Of a stretch of 64,000 nt of DNA, positions 497 through 64,000 are shown one piece after another (position 1 is the first letter of the stretch; each line of letters opens with the position of its first letter). Both the position numbers and the translations under genes were made by a program. The DNA lies in the IMG/VR virus record IMGVR_UViG_3300003322_000571, positions 1 to 64,000 of that record. One strand, 5' to 3'. The notes beneath the pieces were generated by a model. The model searched no databases and was not told where the DNA came from. It saw nothing but the letters and a program-made list of their open reading frames with translations.

Positions 497-498
497 CT

Positions 499-743
499 AA
501 GTTGTTGCGTGGGTAGAGACGTTCATCATTTGTTCGACTCAAATATTTCCCGCAATGTACATTTAAGAGACCATCTTGCATGGTGCTGCGATAATCGCCT
601 AAGTGGCTTGGGATGTTGGTTAGTACTCCCTTGAACGACGATCTTGCAGTTAGGACTAATCTGCACGTGTACATTGCGGGAAATCGGGCCTGGTGGCCCA
701 TGGCGGTGTGAAAACCGTAGTTTCTCCGACTTTAACTCAACTT
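499..743 (+). ncRNA. Y RNA-like (YrlA-type) RNA 1: permuted tRNA-like domain with a large insert
   Basis: Shared terminal motif GTTGTTGCGTGG...GTTCATC / TTTAACTCAAC; T-arm ATTTG-TTCGACT-CAAAT, 17-bp stem ATTTCCCGCAATGTACA/TGTACATTGCGGGAAAT, then D-like arm GGGC-CTGGTG-GCCC. Confidence 0.65.
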
Positions 744-747
744 AAAT

Positions 748-856
748 GCGGGCGCTGGTAGCCTCGCTTGGCGACGGCCATAGTAACCAGAAGAGACTCC
801 GGATCTCTATTGTCTGGCGAATGCGAGTATTGGTTCGATTCCAATAAACCTGCACA
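748..856 (+). ncRNA. tRNA-like RNA with an elongated anticodon arm (CCG loop)
   Basis: GCGGG/CCTGC ends, T-arm ATTGG-TTCGATT-CCAAT, distal hairpin AGAGA-CTCCGGA-TCTCT. Confidence 0.55.
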
Positions 857-931
857 GAATTTAGTAAAGCCCTCTGCGAAAGCATTGACACTAAGTTCTG
901 CTACAAGGTTACTTGTAGCAACCAACTGATT

Positions 932-1081
932 ACTGTTGCGAAGTGCAGAATTCCTTCAGAAACTGTCGAGTGTAAACTCTTGGAGGTTCGAATCCTCCCC
1001 AATGGCCATATCGAAAGTGCTGGCAGGTGGCGAAACTGGTAGACGCGAAAGTCCAAAAAGTCTGTACAACTTAATCTCAGT
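932..1081 (+). ncRNA. Y RNA-like RNA 2: circularly permuted tRNA-Leu(CAG)-like domain
   Basis: CTGTTGCGAAG-TGCAGA-ATTCCTTC ... TCTGTAC-AAC-TTAATCTCAG; inside, the variable arm and T-arm come before the D-arm (GGCGAAACTGGTAGACGC). Confidence 0.75.
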
Positions 1082-1089
1082 GTCAAATT

Positions 1090-1174
1090 GGATGACTTAC
1101 TTCCTAGGTGGAAGCACAGCCTCGAAAGCTGATGATCTCGGAAACGGGATGGGGGTCGGTACCTCAGTCATCCG
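1090..1174 (+). tRNA. tRNA-Ser(CGA), non-canonical (probable 8/4 fold)
   Basis: GGATGACT/AGTCATCC acceptor, CAGC-CTCGAAA-GCTG, long variable arm, G73. Confidence 0.75.
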
Positions 1175-1177
1175 CAA

Positions 1178-1320
1178 ATGTGTTGTTGCGTAGTGTAGGA
1201 TTTCTTCATATCCCACGCCGTGTACGTAGGTTCGATTCCTACCTGCCGAGATTCTTGGCAGTCGTCTAGTGGTAGGACAATGGCTTCAAAAAGTGCCTGT
1301 ACGAATTTGACTCAACATAT
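1178..1320 (+). ncRNA. Y RNA-like RNA 3: circularly permuted tRNA domain
   Basis: TGTTGTTGCGTAG-TGTAGG-ATTTCTTC ... CCTGTAC-GAA-TTTGACTCAACA; T-arm GTAGG-TTCGATT-CCTAC, acceptor closed by a loop, then D-arm GTCTAGTGGTAGGAC. Confidence 0.8.
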
Positions 1321-1323
1321 CTT

Positions 1324-1413
1324 GGAACGTAGCGTGCTGAGGATGCACAACGAGCTTTGAACACTCGGGCTGTCGGTGAAGAGCCGGCAATGGTTCGACT
1401 CCATTACGTTCCT
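1324..1413 (+). tRNA. tRNA-Ser(TGA), divergent
   Basis: GGAACGT/ACGTTCC, loop TT-TGA-AC, long variable arm, T-arm. Confidence 0.75.
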
Positions 1414-1427
1414 CTTATAGGTGACAT

Positions 1428-1580
1428 ATGAAATTGATTGAATTGATTGTTACATTGCTTGGTGGACTAATCTCCACAGCACTTTGGATTATCCTTTGGT
1501 TTAACCCGTTGTGGTTCAGAGAGGATTTGCTTAATAAGTACTATCGATCGAACTTTTCATATTTCAACCCGTTCCGATAA
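1428..1580 (+). CDS. small membrane protein (50 aa)
   Basis: AGGTGA RBS; hydrophobic N-terminus MKLIELIVTLLGGLISTALWIILW. Confidence 0.55.
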   Translation: MKLIELIVTLLGGLISTALWIILWFNPLWFREDLLNKYYRSNFSYFNPFR

Positions 1581-1585
1581 TTTTT

Positions 1586-1716
1586 GGTAGATTGGTGTAA
1601 CGGTAGCACGCGTAAACTACCACTAATCGATCTTGTCTCGTCTAGCGACGTTGCGTAGAAAAGTGTTACTTCGCTTTCATTCGCGCGCGGTGGGGGTTCG
1701 AATCCCTCGTCTACCT
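1586..1716 (+). ncRNA. Y RNA-like RNA 4: normally ordered tRNA body with the shared stem in place of the anticodon loop
   Basis: GGTAGAT/GTCTACC acceptor with D- and T-arms; insert TTGTCTCGTC-TAGC-GACGTTGCGTAG...TTACTTC. Confidence 0.7.
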
Positions 1717-1722
1717 CAAATT

Positions 1723-1748
1723 AAAGTCGCTTCGGCGACTTTTCCTTT
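1723..1748 (+). terminator. intrinsic terminator
   Basis: AAAGTCGC-TTCG-GCGACTTTT. Confidence 0.7.
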
Positions 1749-4093: not shown

Positions 4094-4176
4094 GCGGGTA
4101 TAGCTCAGTTGGTAGAGCACCGGTCTTCCAAACCGGAGGCGAATAGTTAACGCAGGTTCGAATCCTGTTGCCCGCT
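4094..4176 (+). tRNA. tRNA-Gly(TCC) with an enlarged variable loop
   Basis: CCGGT-CTTCCAA-ACCGG; variable region of about 15 nt. Confidence 0.85.
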
Positions 4177-4191
4177 CAAATGGAGAAATCC

Positions 4192-4620
4192 ATGATGGAA
4201 TTTGCGCATAACGGTACTGGCATTGTTCGGTACGATCCTCATCGCGGCACGATGAAGTCTAACACGAAGAATTGGTGCGTAATTGACGTTGATCGCGAGA
4301 TCACTCGGTACAACCGGTTCTGGCTTCAACGTGAGAAGCACATCATTCTGCAGCAGCCTGCTTGGGACGCTCACATCTCGGTTGTTCGAGGTGAAAGGCT
4401 TAGCCCCAAAGCACAAAAGCTGTGGAAGAAGTACGAAGGGAAGCGTGTTCCTATTCGGTATGAGCATGGTGATATCCAAATGTCCAAGGACCAAGATCAG
4501 CCTGGTTGGTTCTATTGGATTCGTGTTGACTGCCCGTTCGTGGACGAAATTCGTCAAGAGTTGGGGTTGATCACGAGTTGGAAGTATCATCATATTACGA
4601 TCGGTAGAACTTACTACTGA
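4192..4620 (+). CDS. putative 2H phosphoesterase
   Basis: Two Hx(S/T) motifs: AHISVV and HHITIG. Confidence 0.5.
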   Translation: MMEFAHNGTGIVRYDPHRGTMKSNTKNWCVIDVDREITRYNRFWLQREKHIILQQPAWDAHISVVRGERLSPKAQKLWKKYEGKRVPIRYEHGDIQMSKDQDQPGWFYWIRVDCPFVDEIRQELGLITSWKYHHITIGRTYY

Positions 4621-4836: not shown

Positions 4837-4938
4837 AGGTCCATGGTGTAACGGCAGCATTCCGGTCTCCTAAGTGCTTGCTCTAATGAGCATTTAGGAA
4901 AACCGTCGGTCGCGGTTCGAATCCGTGTGGACCTGCCA
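4837..4938 (+). tRNA. tRNA-Trp(CCA) with a 28-nt hairpin insertion in the anticodon (4871-4898)
   Basis: AGGTCCA/TGGACCT-G-CCA; removing the insert restores CGGT-CT-CCA-AA-ACCG. Confidence 0.8.
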
Positions 4939-12682: not shown

Positions 12683-14170
12683 ATGAATATTCGTCAATCC
12701 GAAGACATCATCCGTCGCCGCGCTGAACTGTGGGCTGAGCTGGAAGCTCTGGAAGATCCCCGCACAATCACGTCGCTTGCCGACAACCCCATCCTCGATA
12801 CTGACAGCTACAAGCTGTGCCACCAGGCAATGTACAACATTCTTGGTGTGACCAAGTCGTTCTCGTACATCGAGCCTCGAATTCACGACAAGACGATGTT
12901 CTTCGCAGGCCTTCAGATGTATCTGAAGCGTATGAAGCCGATCACGCACAAGATGGTTGATCAGGCGAAGGAATTCTTCGGCAAGCACATCATCGGTGGT
13001 GCTGAGATGTTCCCGGAAGCTGACTGGCGCCGTGTCGTCGATGAATTCGGTGGTTATCCTCCGATCAAGATTCGTGCACTGCCGGAAGGTACTGTGATCA
13101 AGTCGCGTAACGCGCTGGTCACGATCGAATGTGACGTTCCTGGCCTCAGCTGGCTCGCTGCGTACTACGAAACTGCGATCCTTCGCGCTGTGTGGTATCC
13201 GACGACCGTCGCTTCGAAGAGCTACGACATTCGTCAAATGCTTCGCAAGTTCGCTGAACAGACGAGCGATCTGTCTGTCGAAGAAGTCGTCATGTTCATG
13301 TACCATGACTTCGGTGCGCGTGGTGTGTCGAGTTTCGAATCTGCCGGCCTCGGTGGCGCAGCCCACATTCTTGCAGGGTCGTGGGGTACTGACACGATCA
13401 CAGGTGCGATCTTCGCCAACGAACTGTACGGCTCTGACATGAGCGCGTTCAGTGTGTTTGCTACGGAACACAGCATCATGACGATGCGTGGCCGTGAAGG
13501 TGAACTGCAGACGGTTCGTGACATCATCAAGACGTACAACAAGGGTCCTGGGACGATCGTGTCGATCGTTTCTGACGGGTACGACATCTTCAATCTTGCT
13601 GACCATTACTGCACGACGCTGAAGCAGGAAATCATCGACGCAGGTATTCGCCTTGTTGTTCGTCCTGACTCTGGTGATGCTGTTGACGTAATCTGCAAGC
13701 TGCTGCTGAAGTTCGAAGCAGCTTACGGCGTGACGGTCAACAGCAAGGGATACAAGGTGTTGAACACCGTTCGTATCCTGCAAGGTGACGGCCTGTCGAC
13801 GGTCGAAGATTTCGCCAAGATCGTTGGTGCGGTCATCGCTCTGGGATTCGGCATTGAGAACCTCGTGTTCGGTATGGGTGGTGGTCTCTTGCAGATCGTC
13901 AACCGTGACCTGTACAAGTTTGCGATGAAGACTTGTGCTGCGGAAGTCAACGGTCAGTGGATCGATGTGTTCAAGGATCCTGTTACTGACCAAGGAAAGC
14001 GCTCGAAGAAGGGTCGTCTGACGGTCGTCAAGCGCAACGATGAAGCGATCACCGTTCGCTTGGAAGAAGTACTGCCGACTGATGTCGAACTGATGCAAGA
14101 CGTGTGGTATGCCGGTACTCTGTACAAGAGCTACAACGTCGAACAGGTTCGTGCAAACAGCCGTGCATAA
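12683..14170 (+). CDS. nadV: nicotinamide phosphoribosyltransferase
   Basis: DTDSYK, HDFGARG, ATEHS, RPDSGD, QGDG, FGMGG, FAMK motifs. Confidence 0.95.
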   Translation: MNIRQSEDIIRRRAELWAELEALEDPRTITSLADNPILDTDSYKLCHQAMYNILGVTKSFSYIEPRIHDKTMFFAGLQMYLKRMKPITHKMVDQAKEFFGKHIIGGAEMFPEADWRRVVDEFGGYPPIKIRALPEGTVIKSRNALVTIECDVPGLSWLAAYYETAILRAVWYPTTVASKSYDIRQMLRKFAEQTSDLSVEEVVMFMYHDFGARGVSSFESAGLGGAAHILAGSWGTDTITGAIFANELYGSDMSAFSVFATEHSIMTMRGREGELQTVRDIIKTYNKGPGTIVSIVSDGYDIFNLADHYCTTLKQEIIDAGIRLVVRPDSGDAVDVICKLLLKFEAAYGVTVNSKGYKVLNTVRILQGDGLSTVEDFAKIVGAVIALGFGIENLVFGMGGGLLQIVNRDLYKFAMKTCAAEVNGQWIDVFKDPVTDQGKRSKKGRLTVVKRNDEAITVRLEEVLPTDVELMQDVWYAGTLYKSYNVEQVRANSRA

Positions 14171-22736: not shown

Positions 22737-22951
22737 TGGAACTAAAGGTACGAGCAATTGTCCGTGTTAAGCGAGCAAACGTCGAGTTTGCTCCAGGACT
22801 TGGAATTGGTGTCCTTGCAACACAAGAGTTCAAAGTTCAAGTGCCGTTGGGTCGAACTGTGACCGATCACAGAGTTTCAGCTTGCATTCATGATGTTGGA
22901 CAAGCATTGCTTGACGATAGTGTAGAAGTAATCTACGAGGAAGTGAAATGA
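22736..22951 (+). CDS. hypothetical protein
   Basis: Translationally coupled ORF. Confidence 0.6.
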
Positions 22952-24021
22952 AAATCTACCTTGTCGGCGGTGCAGTTCGCGATATCCTTCTTGGTCTTGA
23001 GCCGAAGGATCGTGACTACGTCGTTGTTGGTGCAACTCCTGAAGATATGCTCGCTAAGGGCTTTTCGAAAGTTGGTGCATCGTTTCCTGTGTTCCTTCAT
23101 CCTGAAACTGGTGAAGAGTACGCTCTTGCACGTACCGAACGGAAGACGGGCGTTGGTTACAACGGGTTTGACGTGACGTTCGATACGTCTATCACTCTGG
23201 AAGATGACCTTCGTCGTCGTGATCTGACGATCAATTCAATGGCAATGGACCTCGAAACGAACGAGATCATTGATCCGTTCGGTGGTCAAAGTGATCTCAA
23301 GCGAAAGATCCTCCGTCATACAAGTGAAGCGTTTGCTGAGGATCCGGTTCGTGTTCTTCGTACTGCTCGGTTCGCAGCTCGGTACGGGTTTGATGTGTCA
23401 GAAACGACACTGGAGCTGATGGAACAGGTCGCTCCAGAACTTGACCATGTTCCTGCGGAACGAATCTTCGCCGAGTTCCAGAAGGGCTTGATGGAGAAAG
23501 CTCCGTACAGGATGCTTGGTGTACTGGTACAGTGCTACGCTGACAACGTTAAGTCGGTTGAACCATTTCTTCGTGGTGATCATGATCTGTGGCAACGTCT
23601 GCACCTTGTTCGAGATGATACGCCGTTGCATGTTCGGTTTGCTCTGATCGCTCGTCGCTTCCACCCGGAAGATTACGAAGCGTGCAAGATTCCTACAGAC
23701 CTTGCACGAGTGGCGAAAGCAGTTCAGTCGCACTTCTATCAATGGAAGGGACTTCGTACTTGCTCTGATGAACGGTTCGTTAAGATGTGTGACAGATACC
23801 GTGCTTTCAGCAACCCGGACTTCTTCCAGCAAGTGCTCGATGTATTTGAATTCATTGAACATCCGTACGCGATCAAAGGTGTATGGCGTGAACCTATCAA
23901 CGAACGTCTGGCGTTGGCAACGAGCATCGATGCTGCAACAATTGTTGCTAGTCTGCCGATTAAAGACGGCAAGTTGATTCAGGCGAAGATTCACGAAGCA
24001 CGTCTTGCCGCAATGAAGTAA
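22948..24021 (+). CDS. cca: tRNA nucleotidyltransferase (CCA-adding enzyme)
   Basis: [40 protein letters not shown]. Confidence 0.95.
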
Positions 24022-58275: not shown

Positions 58276-58823
58276 TTTACTTGTTTTTAGATACGGAGTT
58301 CACCTCGTTTGAACAACCAGAGCTGATCTCCATTGGCATCGTTTCGGAAGACGGTCAACATGAATTCTACCGTGAAGTGTCCGACCACAATGCGTATAAA
58401 CGTAGCCAGTTCGTCAAGGACGTCGTCATCCCGTTGTTGTTCAACGACTACGCAACAAGCATGATTCGTGAGTACGTTGCTATGGATCTCAACAAGTGGA
58501 TCGATAGCCTCCCAACCGATCAAGTGACAATTGTTGTTGATTATCCTGGTGACTGGCATCTCGTTAAGCCATTGCTTGATAAGGTGTCTGAGCGACGCGT
58601 TAAGATCAATGCTGAGATGCGTAATCACTCGTTCCTTGCTGCTGCACGGTACCGAGCTGTTGATGTCTCGCCTGAAAAGACATTGGAAGCAATGTTCGTG
58701 ATGGAGGAGTCTGAAGAGGCTTACTTCAAGACAGATCCTCGTCAACATCACGCTTTGGTCGATGCACGAGCAATGCGTGCTGGATGGATTGCAGCTTTGG
58801 AGGTTCTCAATGGACAGCAATAA
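58272..58823 (+). CDS. DEDDh 3'-5' exonuclease
   Basis: FLDTEF, LISIGIV, HHALVDA. Confidence 0.88.
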   Translation: MIYLFLDTEFTSFEQPELISIGIVSEDGQHEFYREVSDHNAYKRSQFVKDVVIPLLFNDYATSMIREYVAMDLNKWIDSLPTDQVTIVVDYPGDWHLVKPLLDKVSERRVKINAEMRNHSFLAAARYRAVDVSPEKTLEAMFVMEESEEAYFKTDPRQHHALVDARAMRAGWIAALEVLNGQQ

Positions 58824-59766
58824 ACTACTAGGAGGCTTTTATGGCCTCGTTCTTGGTGATGCTGTTGGTGTTCCGTTTGAATTTCAACAGCCGCGCCAAC
58901 TACCGCCGCTGTCAAAAATCGACATTGTGATGGCTGATGTTCCCAAGTTCACCAAAACATATCCGCAAGTCCCGTACGGTACCTGGTCCGATGACACAGC
59001 ATTGTCATTGTGTCTTCTTGATGCGTTGCTTGATTTTACCGAGCCGGAGATGTGGCACGGCGACTTTGTCGAGAATATGCAAAATTGGCGATTCCATGGC
59101 AAATTTACTCCGTATAACGAGAAGAAATTTGACATTGGGTTGCAGACTGCCATGGCATTGACTGAACTGGAAGACGGATTGAGTATTCAGGCGCGTGTGG
59201 ACGGCCCAGATCGTTGTGGAAACGGTGCTTTGATGCGTAGCCTTCCAGTTGCCCTCGTGTATGCTTACGTACCAGACCACGACGTTCGTGCAAACTTAAT
59301 TGCCAATGTTACACTCGATCACGTCAATGCTACCCACGCGAACATGATGAGCAAGATTGTCAGTTTGGCGTATACGTTGCTGGCATCATATCTTCTCGAT
59401 GGAGTGTATTGGTTCGATGCCATTGATCTGGCGCTTGATAAGACCGAACAACTTCTTGGTGAAGCTTATAAGGATGACATGTTGAAGTTCCGAGCTTATG
59501 AGCATCGTGAACCAACAGGAACAGGCTACTCTGTTGATACATTCTGGTCTGCGATTTATGCATTGAAGGCTGGTTCAGACTTCCGTACAACGATTCAGCA
59601 TGCTATTTCACTTGGCAACGATACAGACACAACTGCATGCGTTGCTGGTGGACTCGCGGGGATTATCTACGGGTTTGATCGTCTTCCTGTTGATTGGCTT
59701 GCACATCTTCGCGATAAGCAACAAATTGATCAATATGCTCAGCGACTACTAATTATCTCACTATGA
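58810..59766 (+). CDS. ADP-ribosylglycohydrolase
   Basis: GDAVGVPFEF, WSDDT, GNGALMR, GNDTDT. Confidence 0.93.
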   Translation: MDSNKLLGGFYGLVLGDAVGVPFEFQQPRQLPPLSKIDIVMADVPKFTKTYPQVPYGTWSDDTALSLCLLDALLDFTEPEMWHGDFVENMQNWRFHGKFTPYNEKKFDIGLQTAMALTELEDGLSIQARVDGPDRCGNGALMRSLPVALVYAYVPDHDVRANLIANVTLDHVNATHANMMSKIVSLAYTLLASYLLDGVYWFDAIDLALDKTEQLLGEAYKDDMLKFRAYEHREPTGTGYSVDTFWSAIYALKAGSDFRTTIQHAISLGNDTDTTACVAGGLAGIIYGFDRLPVDWLAHLRDKQQIDQYAQRLLIISL

Positions 59767-60449: not shown

Positions 60450-61172
60450 ATGTACATCATCTACAAACACACTTGTACTGCCACTGGTAAAAGTTATGTT
60501 GGACAAACCAAAGAACTAACTAAGCGTACAAACGCACACAAGAGTTCAAGGTCGGGGTGCGTTGCGTTCAGGAACGCCATTAGCTGCTACGGGTGGGAGT
60601 CATTTGTCACGGTTGAGTTGGCTTGTTGCACGACGGTTGGAGACGCCAACGTTGTAGAGAGCTTGTTGATATCCGAATACAACACCATAGCACCCAGTGG
60701 ATATAACTTAACAAGTGGTGGCAAAGCATGTCAGATCAGCGAATTGACCAAGCGGAAAATTTCTGAGTCACTGAAAGGTAGGCCGAAGCCTCCCCGGACA
60801 TCATCTCACATAGAAAATCTGGCTGCACGGCGTCGAGGAAAGTCGTATGAGGAGTTATACGGCGTTGAACGAGCCAAAGAGTTAAAGAAAAACAAAGGGC
60901 ACGCGTTTGATGAGTACCATTCACAGCGACGAGGAAAAGGGTTTAACGACTTGTTTGGTGAAGACAAAGCCGCAGAGATACGCGCAAAGATGTCGAGGAC
61001 TAGGTTGACCAAAATTCCCGAATCAACCCAAGTGTTGATAGAAACAACATACGATCGTGACAAGTGTGTGACAAAAACGTTTGCGGAATCAATCGGGTTG
61101 ACAGTATACATTGTAGTTAGATATTTGAAGGACATCGGTAAATGGAATCCAAAGCAGCTCCCAAGCAGGTAA
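60450..61172 (+). CDS. GIY-YIG homing endonuclease
   Basis: IIY..T...GKSYVGQT, GYNLTSGG, NUMOD3-like repeat. Confidence 0.9.
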   Translation: MYIIYKHTCTATGKSYVGQTKELTKRTNAHKSSRSGCVAFRNAISCYGWESFVTVELACCTTVGDANVVESLLISEYNTIAPSGYNLTSGGKACQISELTKRKISESLKGRPKPPRTSSHIENLAARRRGKSYEELYGVERAKELKKNKGHAFDEYHSQRRGKGFNDLFGEDKAAEIRAKMSRTRLTKIPESTQVLIETTYDRDKCVTKTFAESIGLTVYIVVRYLKDIGKWNPKQLPSR

Positions 61173-61558
61173 TCGTAATGAGACGCGATCTGAAGATGCC
61201 GCGAGGAAAGATTGCGGCACAGGCAGCACATGCTTCAATGGCAGGCCTTCTCAACCATGTTACCTTCCGTCTTGAGGAAGACACGATGGAGGGATGGGCG
61301 TTGTCGATGCCGAAGAATGGTGCGATGTCACAGTGGTTGCGTGGCGCTTTCACCAAGGTTTGCGTTTGCGTTGAGAGTGAAGCTGAACTTGAGGCTGTGT
61401 ACAAGCAAGCTCAATTGGCTGGCCTCAACGTGTCAAAGATTGTCGATAACGGTTTGACTGTATTCGACAACGTTCCCACTTGGACGTGCATCGGTGTGGG
61501 GCCGGACTTCCCTGAGCGAATTGATCCAATCACTGGCCATTTGAAACTATACAATTGA
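61142..61558 (+). CDS. pth2: peptidyl-tRNA hydrolase Pth2
   Basis: KQVIVMRRDLKM..GKIAAQAAHA, IVDNGLT, IGVGP, ITGHLKLY. Confidence 0.93.
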   Translation: MESKAAPKQVIVMRRDLKMPRGKIAAQAAHASMAGLLNHVTFRLEEDTMEGWALSMPKNGAMSQWLRGAFTKVCVCVESEAELEAVYKQAQLAGLNVSKIVDNGLTVFDNVPTWTCIGVGPDFPERIDPITGHLKLYN

Positions 61559-62292: not shown

Positions 62293-62390
62293 GCCAGCGT
62301 TTCTAATATTGGCCTTAGGGGTGCCCTTATAAAGCACTAAGACCCGTCTAGATCAGGCGGTTAATGTGGGTTCGATTCCCATCGCTGGTA
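62293..62390 (+). tRNA. tRNA-Ile(TAT)-like with a long variable arm
   Basis: GCCAGCG/CGCTGGT; loop CT-TAT-AA; extra arm of about 28 nt. Confidence 0.7.
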
Positions 62391-62446
62391 CACACAACCC
62401 TAATATTTCTGTTGGGGTAACGTACTCAACCATATATACTTTCTTC

Positions 62447-62513
62447 AGCTGTTGCGTAGTTCAAGGGTTACTTCTTTTGGTGAAACTATCCCCTTGACGT
62501 TTTAATCTCAGCT
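62447..62513 (+). ncRNA. Y RNA-like RNA 6: minimal
   Basis: AGCTGTTGCGTAG-TTCAAGGG-TTACTTC...CCCTTGAC-GTT-TTAATCTCAGCT; TATACT -10 box just upstream. Confidence 0.75.
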
Positions 62514-62526
62514 TTAACATATGTAC

Positions 62527-62588: not shown

Positions 62589-62600
62589 ACTTTTGGTTGA

Positions 62601-62635
62601 AGCCCTGGTATGCAACACTGCTACCAGGGCTTTTC
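62601..62635 (+). terminator. intrinsic terminator
   Basis: AGCCCTGGTA...TACCAGGGCTTTT. Confidence 0.7.
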
Positions 62636-62652
62636 CTTTTTGGAGAAAATAA

Positions 62653-63573: not shown

Positions 63574-64000
63574 ATGTCAAAACTCAATCCAACTGGTCGT
63601 AACGTTACGACAAACATTGTTGCGGTTGCTGCGAACCGTGGTGAACAGCTTGCTGTTTCTGCGAATGGCAACTTGCAATTCAAGAAGGACTCCTACCAGA
63701 CGTTGTACGAAACAACTGTTTCGACGATGCTTGGCAAGGGCAACCAACTGAATTCTGCTGATGCGCTTGTGCAAAAGCTGAAGGCGTCCGTTCGTTCTGT
63801 TGTTGCTGATGGCGCCAGCTCATTCGACTTCATTGCGAACCTCGCAATCCACGCACGTACGGAGATGAACGTCCGTACGATCCCAATCGTTCTTGTGGTT
63901 GAATTTGCGAAGGCGCTCGCCGATCAGCGTCAACCGTTGGTTGCACGTGTTGATGCGATTGAACAAGAACTGACTACAGCTCGTAAGGCTAAGCGTGCGA
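63574..64000 (+). CDS. Ro60/Rsr-like TROVE-domain protein (N-terminal part; runs off the window)
   Basis: GGAG RBS; open to the window end; DFIANLAIHARTEMNVRTIPIVLVVE resembles the TROVE F.A.LA.YAR..M.LR..P helix. Confidence 0.72.
   Translation, partial: MSKLNPTGRNVTTNIVAVAANRGEQLAVSANGNLQFKKDSYQTLYETTVSTMLGKGNQLNSADALVQKLKASVRSVVADGASSFDFIANLAIHARTEMNVRTIPIVLVVEFAKALADQRQPLVARVDAIEQELTTARKAKRA

What the first reader, a model, noticed from the sequence alone, without database searches (positions are those of the whole stretch)
932..1320. Two circularly permuted tRNA domains that still show their parent tRNA
Seen: in 932-1081 the order is anticodon remnant (TT-CAG-AA-ACTGT), long variable arm, T-arm, loop-closed acceptor, then a Leu-type D-arm. 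In 1178-1320 it is T-CCC-AC-GCCGT, T-arm, acceptor closed by a short loop, D-arm, ATGGC. Inference: these derive independently from a tRNA-Leu(CAG) and a Gly/Glu-type tRNA opened at the anticodon loop. YrlA-like RNAs may therefore arise repeatedly by capturing tRNAs. Alternatively they are permuted tRNA precursors that need cleavage and ligation.
Basis: partly seen in the sequence, partly recalled or inferred. Interest (0 to 1): 0.8.

Follow-up and report, generated by a model that had tools for sequence, protein, structure and literature searches.

The report
Phage Y RNAs with tRNA-type cores
The two elements are small non-coding "Y RNAs" of a giant uncultured phage that also encodes the Ro60 protein such RNAs bind; their middle parts are tRNAs in rearranged order, a known design, but here one copies a leucine tRNA and the other a glutamate/glycine-type tRNA, which bears on how such RNAs evolve from tRNA genes.

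Summary
Window 929-1084 (M1) and 1179-1319 (M2) each run: anticodon-stem 3' strand, variable region, T arm, loop-closed acceptor arm, D arm, anticodon-stem 5' strand. Re-permuted in silico, M2 is a perfect cloverleaf. M1 fails ARAGORN's default threshold only because its acceptor arm is interrupted, and its orthologues pass.

They are not a new kind of element. They are YrlA-class Y RNAs, which the literature already describes as circularly permuted tRNA mimics.
- A covariance model built only from 21 Ro60-adjacent YrlA RNAs of other genomes hits M2 (E 3e-18) and M1 (E 2e-8).
- The 350-kb circular phage contig encodes Ro60 (starts at 63574) and at least four more Y RNAs.

What seems new:
- M1's core is specifically tRNA-Leu-like and M2's D arm specifically tRNA-Glu-like, whereas canonical YrlA D arms are generic.
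- Both types recur, with compensatory changes, in related jumbo-phage contigs.
- Leu-type and Glu-type copies share near-identical flanks, and the similarity ends inside the anticodon-loop-like element. This points to core replacement on a common Y RNA scaffold, not independent births.

The reading as permuted pre-tRNAs is not supported. No transcript data exist. Verdict: a new variant of a known kind, of moderate interest.

The parts
929..1084 (+). M1: complete YrlA-class Y RNA with a Leu-type permuted tRNA core
   Evidence: Full-length match to covariance model R1, which was built from 21 Ro60-adjacent YrlA RNAs of other genomes: 38.0 bits, E 1.9e-8. Orthologues at L090:1051-1219 and L023:2340-2487(-).
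932..948 (+). M1 5' strand of the Ro60-binding helix: outer stem ACTG, motif TTGCGAAG, stem GTGCAG
   Evidence: Pairs with 1062-1081 (CTGTAC ... CAGT). The motif matches the family-invariant GTTGCG.AG.
951..961 (+).
   Evidence: TT.CTTC is invariant in 21/21 Ro60-adjacent YrlA RNAs. The 7-mers in front of the stem in the orthologues read TACAGGA and TTCAAAA.
962..981 (+). M1 anticodon-like stem 3' strand (962-966) and long variable arm (967-981)
   Evidence: ACTGT pairs with AAAGT at 1048-1052 (4 of 5 pairs). There are compensatory changes in the orthologues at pair 1 of the stem and pair 1 of the variable arm.
982..998 (+). M1 T arm: GGAGG, TTCGAAT, CCTCC
   Evidence: Sequence. Two compensatory pairs among the orthologues.
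999..1027 (+). M1 acceptor-like arm, interrupted: CC/GG, internal loop, GCCA/TGGC, GAAA-capped tip
   Evidence: L090 has the same layout, with a G-C to A-U exchange. L023 has a clean 7 bp plus GCAA.
1028..1052 (+). M1 U8 G9, Leu-type D arm (1030-1046), G26, anticodon-like stem 5' strand (1048-1052)
   Evidence: Of the 15 nearest tRNA D arms, 14 are Leu (P 2.6e-13). It is 20/22 identical to the phage's own tRNA-Leu(gag).
1053..1081 (+). M1 linker CCAAAAAGT and 3' strand of the Ro60-binding helix
   Evidence: Matches the family 3' strand pattern ..CG/CA.CTT.A.CTC plus outer stem.
1179..1319 (+). M2: complete YrlA-class Y RNA with a Glu/Gly-type permuted tRNA core
   Evidence: R1 full-length match, 72.8 bits, E 3.2e-18. 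Rfam RF02553 gives only a local 20-bit match to 1225-1278. Orthologues at L023:2569-2716(-), L053:9852-9974(-), L058:583-708(-) and L063:3427-3569(-).
1180..1216 (+). M2 5' strand (outer stem GTGTTG, TTGCGTAG, stem GTGTAGG), motif ATTTCTTCA, and loop-like ATCCCAC
   Evidence: Pairs with 1296-1318. The 7-mer sits exactly where canonical YrlA RNAs have a 7-nt C-U-NNN-A-A loop.
1217..1242 (+). M2 anticodon-like stem 3' strand GCCGT, variable loop GTAC, T arm
   Evidence: GCCGT pairs with ATGGC at 1280-1284 (5/5). Four of the 5 pairs show compensatory changes in the orthologues.
1243..1261 (+). M2 7-bp acceptor stem closed by the 5-nt loop GATTC
   Evidence: The only difference from a soil-metagenome variant within M1 and M2 is in this loop, at 1251.
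1262..1319 (+). M2 TC, D arm (1264-1278), A26, ATGGC, linker TTCAAAAAGTG, and 3' strand of the Ro60-binding helix
   Evidence: For the D arm, 11 of the 15 nearest tRNAs are Glu (P 1.2e-13). All the usual tertiary-pair bases are present.
62445..62515 (+). M4: minimal Y RNA (helix plus pyrimidine-rich loop, no tRNA module), 1.06 kb upstream of Ro60
   Evidence: R1 37.4 bits, E 2.9e-8. Sequence.
63574..64000 (+). Start of the phage Ro60 gene (558 aa; runs to contig position 65250, beyond the window)
   Evidence: L075:10499-12175. Pfam TROVE E 7e-21, VWA_2 E 3e-6.
498..745 (+). M0: Y RNA-like element with the same helix strands, a weak T-arm-like hairpin and a long 18-bp hairpin with a large insert
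   Evidence: Fold z -3.4. Motif at 505. Shorter orthologue at L090:903-1045. Not picked up full-length by R1.
1586..1716 (+). M3: non-permuted counterpart. A tRNA frame with an open 7-bp acceptor stem, in which the anticodon loop is replaced by the Y helix in reversed connectivity, closed by a tetraloop
   Evidence: Orthologues at L090:1666-1797 and L023 have different acceptor stems and different closing loops (TAGC, GAAA, GTAA).

Best explanation
M1 and M2 are two of at least six Y RNAs of a roughly 350-kb uncultured jumbo phage that encodes its own Ro60.

How each RNA is built:
- The 5' and 3' ends pair into the conserved Ro60-binding helix: GUUGCG(A/U)AG opposite ..CUU.A.CUC.
- The interior folds as a tRNA-shaped module with T arm before D arm and a closed acceptor arm, as in YrlA.

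Likely action, inferred from the family: Ro60 holds the helix. The tRNA mimic serves as the effector or gating module, recognised by tRNA-handling enzymes. This would couple Ro60 to RNA decay or repair during infection, alongside the phage's tRNA array, CCA-adding enzyme, 2H phosphoesterase and RNA ligase.

Processing (inferred): the RNAs sit inside tRNA arrays and are probably cut out of a polycistronic precursor by tRNA-processing enzymes. M2 ends 4 nt before tRNA-Ser.

History (about 55% likely): M1-type and M2-type copies share one Y RNA scaffold. Their cores were replaced by, or gene-converted from, tRNA-Leu and tRNA-Glu/Gly-type genes, with one breakpoint in the anticodon-loop-like element. 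This happened in an ancestor of a clade of jumbo phages.

Shown: sequence anatomy, family membership, Ro60 gene, orthologues with covariation, isotype likeness, flank/core mosaic.
Inferred: Ro60 binding, processing, function, direction of exchange.

The confidence of 0.8 is for the identity as YrlA-class Y RNAs of a Ro60-encoding phage.
For: Family membership:
- Model R1, built only from Ro60-adjacent RNAs of other genomes, hits M2 at 72.8 bits and M1 at 38 bits, both full length.
- Its consensus has 30 pairs, 25 of them with compensatory changes.

Link to Ro60:
- Six of 10 ORFs tested next to pattern hits are TROVE proteins.
- 45 of 215 pattern hits have TROVE within 4 kb on the same strand.
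- The phage Ro60 is at contig position 63574-65250.

Fold:
- ARAGORN calls cloverleaves for re-permuted M2 and for four orthologues.
- Compensatory changes occur in all helices.

Isotype likeness.

Census:
- Of 162 unique family hits, only 4 have Leu-like and 8 Glu-like D arms.
- The Leu-like ones all lie in one phage clade.

Mosaic:
- Flanks of M1 and M2 are 79% identical, cores 54%.
- The 5' flank of L090's Leu-type copy and L023's Glu-type copy is 26/27 identical. That is in the top 10 of 5,937 inter-locus pairs.
- The similarity stops at CAUAC| inside the loop-like 7-mer.

Conservation: a soil variant has 1 change in 912-1320 (in M2's acceptor loop) against at least 7 in 1321-1557.

Literature for the mechanism: PMC4201824, bioRxiv 10.1101/312249, PMC12135203, PMC7824862.
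Against: - There is no transcript evidence. The only RNA-labelled run holds a single insert at 1320-1456, outside both elements.
- M1 and M2 lie 62 kb from Ro60, not within the 4 kb typical of YrlA.
- The curated Rfam YrlA model does not reach its threshold: 20 bits local for M2, nothing for M1.
- Their D and T stem sequences differ from the 'extremely conserved' YrlA ones, so the effector could differ.
- The flank similarity could come from gene conversion of flanks between paralogues rather than replacement of cores. The flanks are short.
- The flanks show no significant likeness to the halves of their own cores, so a dimeric-tRNA relic is not demonstrated.
Confidence: 0.8

Rival explanations
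1. Permuted tRNA precursors. The RNAs would be cut and religated at the anticodon loop and opened at the acceptor loop, giving working tRNA-Leu(CAG) and tRNA-Gly(CCC).
For: - Re-permuted M2 and four orthologues pass ARAGORN as Gly(ccc/tcc) and Leu(cag/caa).
- Leu(CAG) and Gly(CCC) are absent from the 52 tRNAs found in the 75 kb examined.
- The phage encodes an RNA ligase and a CCA-adding enzyme.
- M. smegmatis YrlA, which has a 7-bp acceptor stem, is cut by RNase P and receives CCA (bioRxiv 10.1101/312249).
Against: - The Glu-type orthologues in L053 and L058 have no acceptor stem at all, and M1 and L090 have interrupted ones.
- U33 and the register of the loop-like 7-mer are not conserved.
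- The flanks are not a splice motif. They are the conserved Ro60-binding helix shared with Ro60-adjacent YrlA RNAs.
- No bacterial splicing endonuclease for such junctions is known (bioRxiv 10.1101/312249).
- Many other C34 isoacceptors are also missing, so the gap in the tRNA set is weak evidence.
Confidence: 0.03
2. Independent births. Each whole RNA arose separately from a tandem pair of like tRNA genes (Leu-Leu, Glu-Glu), and the Ro60-binding helix evolved convergently from the leftover halves.
For: - The dimeric-tRNA model, possibly acting several times, is published (bioRxiv 10.1101/312249).
- Tandem like tRNAs with 4-24-nt spacers are common in this genome: Arg-Arg, Lys-Lys, Asn-Asn, Gln-Gln.
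- M2's acceptor loop of 5 nt fits a discriminator base plus a 4-nt spacer.
- In L090, two tandem tRNA-Glu genes directly follow the Leu-type Y RNA, where M2 follows M1 here.
Against: - Flanks of Leu-type and Glu-type copies are as alike as those of true orthologues (26/27, 24/27). This includes helix positions that vary freely in the family.
- The flanks show no significant likeness to their own core halves: 30 of 32 tests have p above 0.05.
- M2 aligned to L090's tandem tRNA-Glu pair matches only at universally conserved tRNA positions.
Confidence: 0.1
3. No tRNA gene input. The cores diverged in place from a canonical YrlA core and came to look like tRNA-Leu and tRNA-Glu through selection for binding isotype-specific partners (for example synthetases), or by chance.
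For: - Long variable arms are already known in many YrlA RNAs (bioRxiv 10.1101/312249).
- M2's D arm is only 26/36 in score to the best real tRNA, and its T half has no isotype signal.
- Nocardia YrlA paralogues next to rsr also carry Glu-like D arms, so this type is old.
Against: - M1's D arm is 20/22 identical to the phage's own tRNA-Leu(gag) and scores 38/42 against the best tRNA-Leu D arms of other loci. It has the 3-bp stem, the loop length and the A15-U48 pair of tRNA-Leu.
- It would need eight or more coordinated changes from the generic GCUC...GAGC arm.
- The Nocardia Glu-type copies carry the local style of tRNA-Glu D loop, and one has the loop CUUUCAC.
- The abrupt end of flank identity suggests a breakpoint.
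Confidence: 0.15

Closest known systems
YrlA of Salmonella Typhimurium and other bacteria (Rfam RF02553; tRNA-like module solved, PDB 6CU1 per bioRxiv 10.1101/312249)
   Same: - Ends pair into a Ro60-binding helix with a GCG.AG / CGAA-type motif.
- The interior has the T arm 5' of the D arm, with a closed acceptor-like stem-loop between them.
- All tRNA elbow and Levitt-pair bases are present.
- The literature describes it as a circularly permuted tRNA.
   Different: - The D stems here are Leu-type (GCG/CGC, 3 bp) and Glu-type (GUCU/GGAC), not the near-invariant GCUC/GAGC.
- The anticodon-like stem is a clean 5-bp helix made in trans, in place of the hairpin with a 7-nt C-U-NNN-A-A loop seen in 40 of 91 family members.
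- They lie 62 kb from Ro60, inside tRNA arrays.
- They score far below the Rfam threshold.
Mycobacterium smegmatis YrlA (PMC4201824; bioRxiv 10.1101/312249)
   Same: It has a 7-bp acceptor stem like M2. It is cut by RNase P, and CCA is then added. The same fate is plausible for M2, since the phage has a CCA-adding enzyme.
   Different: Processing of M2 is untested. M1's acceptor arm is interrupted and would be a poor substrate.
Phage Y RNAs: mycobacteriophages, Caulobacter phage CcrColossus, Bacillus phage G (PMC4201824); Thermus phage phiLo Yrl1/Yrl2 with phage Ro60 (PMC12135203)
   Same: The RNAs are encoded by a phage together with a phage Ro60. In phiLo they were shown to bind Ro60 and the host PNPase.
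   Different: - Those are one or two RNAs next to the Ro60 gene.
- Here there are at least six paralogues with five different interiors, mostly embedded in tRNA arrays.
- The Ro60 is at most 28% identical to any cultured-phage Ro60.
Circularly permuted tRNA genes of Cyanidioschyzon merolae and some other algae and archaea (as cited in bioRxiv 10.1101/312249)
   Same: The 3' half of the tRNA lies upstream of the 5' half, the acceptor ends are joined by a short linker, and the anticodon stem forms from the transcript's ends.
   Different: - Those mature into working tRNAs through a splicing endonuclease and a circular intermediate.
- Here the ends are a conserved Ro60-binding helix.
- Some orthologues lack the acceptor stem, and the loop register is not kept.
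Deinococcus radiodurans Yrn1 (PMC4201824)
   Same: A Ro60-bound Y RNA with a T-arm-like element. It is thought to derive from tRNA.
   Different: Yrn1 has the opposite order of D-like and T-like arms, with an anticodon-arm-like hairpin between them. Its tRNA likeness is partial.

Membership tests
YrlA-class Y RNA | Helix formed by the 5' and 3' ends, carrying the conserved 5' motif (GNCGAAN0-1G / CGAA region) taken to be the Ro60 site | tested here: met
   M1 has UGCGAAG and M2 UGCGUAG, within GUUGCG.AG. That motif is invariant in 21/21 Ro60-adjacent RNAs, where the variable base is U, C or A. The outer stem and second stem pair, and they covary in the orthologues.
YrlA-class Y RNA | T arm 5' of D arm, with a closed acceptor-like stem-loop between them, and the tRNA tertiary-pair bases | tested here: met
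   U8, A14, the R15-Y48 pair, G18 G19, and the T loop UUCGAUU / UUCGAAU are present in both. M1's acceptor arm is interrupted.
YrlA-class Y RNA | Significant match to a covariance model of Ro60-adjacent members | tested here: met
   Model R1, which contains no sequence from this phage or its relatives: M2 72.8 bits, E 3e-18; M1 38.0 bits, E 2e-8; both full length.
YrlA-class Y RNA | Reaches the curated Rfam RF02553 gathering score (69 bits) | tested here: not met
   M2 gets a local 20 bits (E 0.1) over T arm, acceptor arm and D arm; M1 gets no match. A Nocardia RNA next to rsr also falls short, at 48 bits, so the curated model is narrow.
YrlA-class Y RNA | Encoded near Ro60 on the same strand (within about 4 kb in PMC4201824) | tested here: not met
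   Ro60 is in the same genome and on the same strand, but 62 kb downstream (63574). Only M4 (62445-62515) is within 4 kb.
YrlA-class Y RNA | Near-invariant T and D stem sequences | tested here: not met
   The D stems are GCG/CGC (M1) and GUCU/GGAC (M2), against GCUC/GAGC or GUGU/GCAC in 21/21 training RNAs.
YrlA-class Y RNA | Bound by Ro60 in vivo or in vitro; carries tRNA modifications | not testable with these tools
   This needs RNA immunoprecipitation or gel-shift assays, and modification mapping.
Permuted tRNA gene (matures to a working tRNA) | After re-permutation, a full cloverleaf with a 7-bp acceptor stem, conserved across orthologues | tested here: not met
   M2, L023 (both types), L090 and L063 pass ARAGORN. 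M1 fails at default settings, and the Glu-type copies in L053 and L058 have only a 4-nt linker in place of the acceptor stem.
Permuted tRNA gene (matures to a working tRNA) | Conserved anticodon loop (U33, 7 nt, fixed register) and a processing motif at the transcript ends | tested here: not met
   The 7-mers are UUCAGAA, UACAGGA and UUCAAAA for the Leu type, and AUCCCAC, UACCCAA, GCCCAAA, ACGUCCC and ACUCCAA for the Glu type. The ends are the Ro60-binding helix.
Canonical tRNA gene | Detected by ARAGORN or the Rfam tRNA model in native order | tested here: not met
   No tRNA call overlaps 929-1084 or 1179-1319. There are only weak tRNA-Sec chance-level matches.

The most novel reading that the evidence does not exclude
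These jumbo-phage tRNA arrays may show Y RNAs and tRNAs being interconverted.

Observations behind this reading:
- The same Ro60-binding scaffold carries interchangeable, isotype-specific tRNA bodies: Leu, Glu/Gly, generic, T-arm-only.
- It exists in both circular permutations. M1 and M2 have a closed acceptor arm and an open helix. M3 has an open acceptor stem and a helix closed by a tetraloop.
- Many canonical YrlA RNAs still carry a complete anticodon-arm-like hairpin: C32 in 34/40, U33 in 39/40, R37 in 39/40.

If real, Y RNAs would be generated and reshuffled by tandem duplication and recombination among tRNA genes. The different bodies would then direct phage Ro60 to different tRNA-specific partners, such as synthetases, modification or repair enzymes, or host anticodon nucleases that they could decoy.
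Probability: 0.2. Interest if true: 0.8.

Novelty: new variant of a known kind. Interest (0 to 1): 0.5.

Why it matters
The origin of Y RNAs from tRNA has been argued only from general shape. Here the tRNA-like modules keep enough identity to name the type of tRNA they resemble. The same scaffold is seen with different modules, and in both topologies, in related genomes. That turns the origin question into a comparative problem that can be tested. It also suggests that a phage may use a set of Ro60-Y RNA particles with different tRNA-like faces as part of its tRNA maintenance or counter-defence toolkit. In practice, the curated Rfam model misses these RNAs, so Y RNAs in phage tRNA arrays are probably under-annotated.

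Tried and rejected
- **Rfam scans**: no family reached threshold over M1 or M2. Only a local 20-bit YrlA match for M2.
- **Single-sequence folding**: the MFE structures do not recover the tRNA-like fold, and the energies are not better than shuffles. The fold rests on comparative evidence instead.
- **First collection pattern**: it mostly returned ordinary initiator-type tRNA-Met genes, whose 5' end happens to match TTGCGGAGTGGAG. I replaced it with a pattern that includes the TT.CTTC motif.
- **Leu-type pattern**: two of the four hits were ordinary tandem tRNA-Leu genes, the false-positive class already warned of in PMC4201824.
- **Test for relics of a tRNA dimer**. This asked whether the 5' flank resembles the RNA's own D half and the 3' flank its own T half. 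It was not significant overall. The isolated hits were an 11-nt repeat in L023 and GCC(G)TGTACG in M2. They could equally reflect alternative pairing.
- **M2 aligned to the tandem tRNA-Glu pair that occupies the matching place in L090**: matches fall only at universal tRNA positions.
- **Nearest own-phage tRNA for re-permuted M2**: no Gly or Glu preference over the whole length. The isotype signal is in the D arm only.
- **Transcript evidence**: DNA contigs only, plus one RNA-labelled insert outside the elements.
- **Cultured relatives**: none close.
- **M3-type pattern in viral contigs**: only this contig. Orthologues were found by eye in L090 and L023.
- **Promoter scan**: nothing above chance. 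One clear terminator at 1723-1742, after M3.
Full report
**Context.** The window is the first 64 kb of a 350,089-bp metagenome contig from a root sample.
- The contig's end overlaps its start by 25 bases, and an independent Logan contig bridges the junction, so the record is circular or complete.
- ARAGORN finds 52 tRNAs in the 75 kb examined.
- There is no close phage in the reference collection.
- The capsid is distantly like those of the SCTP-2 / XacN1 / PA5oct jumbo myoviruses.
- The genome carries an RNA-maintenance toolkit:
  - CCA-adding enzyme, 22948-24021
  - 2H phosphoesterase, 4195-4617
  - YqeY, 2063-2506
  - PTH2, 61142-61558
  - an RNA ligase just beyond the window

**Observation.**
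- Re-permuted with its own flanking bases as the loop, M2 is called a perfect cloverleaf at ARAGORN's default threshold.
- M1 is called only at a relaxed threshold and in a shifted register. Its acceptor arm is 2 bp, a 4x1 internal loop, 4 bp and a GAAA-capped tip.
- Thermodynamic folding of the single sequences is uninformative.

**What they are.** M1 and M2 share flanks: a 5' strand TGTTGCG(A/T)AGTG.AG followed by ATT.CTTCA, and a 3' strand CAAAAAGT..CTGTAC..A.TT.A.CTC.
- The same strands occur at four other places in this genome.
- A pattern built from them finds about 30 viral contigs, more than 120 metagenome contigs and 84 bacterial species genomes.
- Six of ten ORFs tested next to such hits are Ro60 (TROVE) proteins.
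- An HMM search finds TROVE on the same strand within 4 kb of 45 of 215 hits.
- The 21 cleanest Ro60-adjacent RNAs, none from this phage or its relatives, align well. RNAalifold predicts an outer stem, a second stem, a T arm, a 7-bp acceptor-like stem and a D arm, and 25 of the 30 pairs show compensatory changes.
- The covariance model built from them matches five elements:

| Element | Bits | E-value |
|---|---|---|
| M2 | 72.8 | 3e-18 |
| M1 | 38.0 | 2e-8 |
| Minimal element, 62445-62515 | 37.4 | 2.9e-8 |
| Element just upstream of the window (L003:10772-10891) | 52.3 | 1.8e-12 |
| Part of M3 (1644-1763) | 26.8 | 2.7e-5 |

- Walking the contig showed a 558-aa TROVE+vWA protein starting at 63574, 1.06 kb downstream of the minimal element.

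So M1 and M2 are YrlA-class Y RNAs of a phage that has its own Ro60. The curated Rfam YrlA model gives M2 only a local 20-bit match and M1 none. It also under-scores a Nocardia RNA next to rsr.

**What is already known.**
- YrlA RNAs were described as tRNA mimics with the T arm before the D arm (PMC4201824).
- That paper's Discussion sets out three ideas: the origin from dimeric tRNA transcripts, the possibility of several origins, and the parallel with algal permuted pre-tRNAs.
- Phage Ro60 and Y RNAs are known from mycobacteriophages, CcrColossus, Bacillus phage G and Thermus phage phiLo (PMC4201824, PMC12135203). TROVE proteins have been noted in a few jumbo phages (PMC7824862).

**What seems new: the identity of the cores.** I compared each D arm with 831 unique tRNAs called in all fetched loci.
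- M1's D arm has 14 Leu among its 15 nearest (P 3e-13). It is 20/22 identical to the phage's own tRNA-Leu(gag).
- M2's D arm has 11 Glu among its 15 nearest (P 1e-13).
- The canonical YrlA D arm is generic: Thr, Phe, Gly, Asn.
- Among 162 unique family hits with E below 1e-6, 74 have no D arm, 76 a generic one, 8 a Glu-like one and 4 a Leu-like one.
- The Leu-like ones come only from this contig and three related ones (L023, L058, L090).
- The Glu-like ones come from that clade and from two Nocardia genomes, where they sit beside a generic paralogue and rsr. The Nocardia copies carry the local style of tRNA-Glu D loop, and one has a hairpin loop CUUUCAC, the tRNA-Glu anticodon loop.

**Orthologues and covariation.**
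- M1-type copies in L090 (syntenic, on a 252-kb contig) and L023, and M2-type copies in L023, L053, L058 and L063, keep every helix through compensatory changes.
- Acceptor arms vary. L023's Leu-type has a clean 7 bp plus GCAA. M1 and L090 have an interrupted arm. The Glu-types in L053 and L058 have none.
- Re-permuted orthologues pass ARAGORN at default settings as Leu(caa), Leu(cag), Gly(ccc) and Gly(tcc).

**The 'anticodon remnant'.**
- In 40 of 91 family members, the stretch between the TT.CTTC motif and the T arm is a perfect 4-5-bp stem with a 7-nt loop, followed by a 3-6-nt variable loop. The loop has C32 in 34/40, U33 in 39/40, R37 in 39/40 and A38 in 36/40. That is an anticodon-arm signature.
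- M1 and M2 lack this hairpin. The strand that would be its 3' side instead pairs with a strand after the D arm, giving the true permuted tRNA.
- M2's ATCCCAC sits exactly where the 7-nt loop lies.
- In the Leu type the 7-mers read UUCAGAA, UACAGGA and UUCAAAA. All are Leu anticodons in register. But in M1 and L023 the first bases belong to the family motif, and U33 is lost in L090.
- In the Glu type, NCC followed by A recurs, but the register shifts.
- I rate a true remnant as plausible, not shown.

**History.**
- Flanks of M1 and M2 are 79% identical, while the cores are 54% identical.
- The 27-base 5' flank of L090's Leu-type copy and L023's Glu-type copy differs at one base. That is in the top 10 of 5,937 inter-locus pairs, and the other top pairs are same-type orthologues.
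- The identity includes helix positions that vary freely in the family. It stops inside the loop-like 7-mer: CAUAC|AGGA against CAUAC|CCAA.
- This mosaic argues for one scaffold with exchanged cores (or exchanged flanks), not independent births of whole RNAs.
- A test for leftovers of a tRNA dimer in the flanks was negative overall.

**A related element.** M3 (1586-1716) has an open 7-bp acceptor stem, a D arm and a T arm in normal tRNA order.
- Its anticodon loop is replaced by the same Y helix in reversed connectivity, closed by a tetraloop.
- Orthologues in L090 and L023 have different acceptor stems (all fully paired) and different closing loops.
- It is the circular permutation of M1 and M2. 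Together they suggest that tandem duplication in these arrays can shift the unit's frame.

**Function.** Nothing here tests it.
- By membership, the helix should bind the phage Ro60, and the tRNA-like module should serve as the effector or gating part. The setting is a genome heavily invested in tRNA supply and RNA repair.
- M2's clean acceptor stem makes RNase P cleavage and CCA addition plausible, by analogy with M. smegmatis YrlA.
- The only expression-type datum is a single adapter-flanked insert at 1320-1456 in an RNA-labelled run, outside both elements.
- A near-identical soil variant differs from the window at one base in 912-1320 (in M2's acceptor loop) and at seven or more in 1321-1557.

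**Verdict.**
- The pre-tRNA alternative is very unlikely.
- Novelty lies in the isotype-specific cores, the flank/core mosaic and the paralogue array.

Noticed in passing
window 1586-1716; L090:1666-1797; L023 about 1600-1740 (- strand): A tRNA-framed Y RNA. It has an open 7-bp acceptor stem, a D arm and a T arm in normal order. The anticodon loop is replaced by the Ro60-binding helix in reversed connectivity, closed by a tetraloop (TAGC, GAAA, GTAA). Acceptor stems differ but stay fully paired in the three phages. A terminator follows at 1723-1742.
   Followed up: partly
window 498-745: Y RNA-like element with the family's helix strands (GCGTGG variant), an A/T-rich T-arm-like hairpin, and an 18-bp perfect hairpin enclosing about 100 nt. 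Fold z is -3.4. The L090 orthologue (903-1045) has the hairpin without the insert.
   Followed up: partly
window 62445-62515 and 63574-64000: Minimal Y RNA (helix plus a UUACUUCUUUU loop, no tRNA module), 1.06 kb upstream of the phage Ro60 gene, which runs off the window end. A terminator-like hairpin follows the RNA at about 62600-62640.
   Followed up: yes
L003:10772-10891 (contig end, just upstream of window position 1): Another Y RNA paralogue with only a T arm and a conserved CTGGGTGC.AC element, wedged between tRNA-Ser(gga) and tRNA-Pro(tgg). The same type occurs in L023, L050, L055, L060, L069, L070 and L090.
   Followed up: partly
alignments A3 and A4 (family-wide): In 40 of 91 YrlA-family RNAs, the so-called variable stem-loop is a perfect 4-5-bp stem with a 7-nt loop of the form C-U-NNN-R-A, followed by a normal short variable loop and the T arm. 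In effect this is a complete anticodon arm. I could not find this stated in the papers I could read.
   Followed up: partly
L255:1117-1252 and L233:546-681 (Nocardia genomes): Each of the two Nocardia genomes has a Glu-type YrlA paralogue beside a generic one, and a TROVE (Ro60) gene lies on the same strand in the fetched stretch. The D loop is the actinobacterial tRNA-Glu style, and one copy has the hairpin loop CUUUCAC.
   Followed up: partly
window 746-853: tRNA-like element with a good T arm (832-846) and an anticodon-arm-like hairpin, but an oversized D region and only a 5-bp acceptor pairing. ARAGORN does not call it, and it gives a weak tRNA-Sec match only.
   Followed up: no
window 1085-1177 and 855-931: The spacers around M1 are themselves structured. 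1090-1172 is closed by an 8-bp stem (GGATGACT/AGTCATCC) and contains a TTACTTCC motif. 855-931 has an 8-bp hairpin, GCTACAAG/CTTGTAGC.
   Followed up: no
window 4094-4177, 4837-4935, 62293-62390; L003:5083-5155: Several tRNA calls are unusual: inserts in the variable region (84-99 nt long), and a CTA-anticodon (amber-reading) tRNA.
   Followed up: no
window 1320-1456: One run labelled RNA holds a single adapter-flanked insert that starts exactly one base after M2's 3' end and covers tRNA-Ser plus 42 nt. It cannot be told from contaminating DNA.
   Followed up: no
window 12683-14170, 58762-59766, 60450-61172: NAMPT/NAPRTase-family enzyme, ADP-ribosylglycohydrolase and a GIY-YIG nuclease. These are NAD-salvage and ADP-ribose genes typical of jumbo-phage counter-defence sets.
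   Followed up: no
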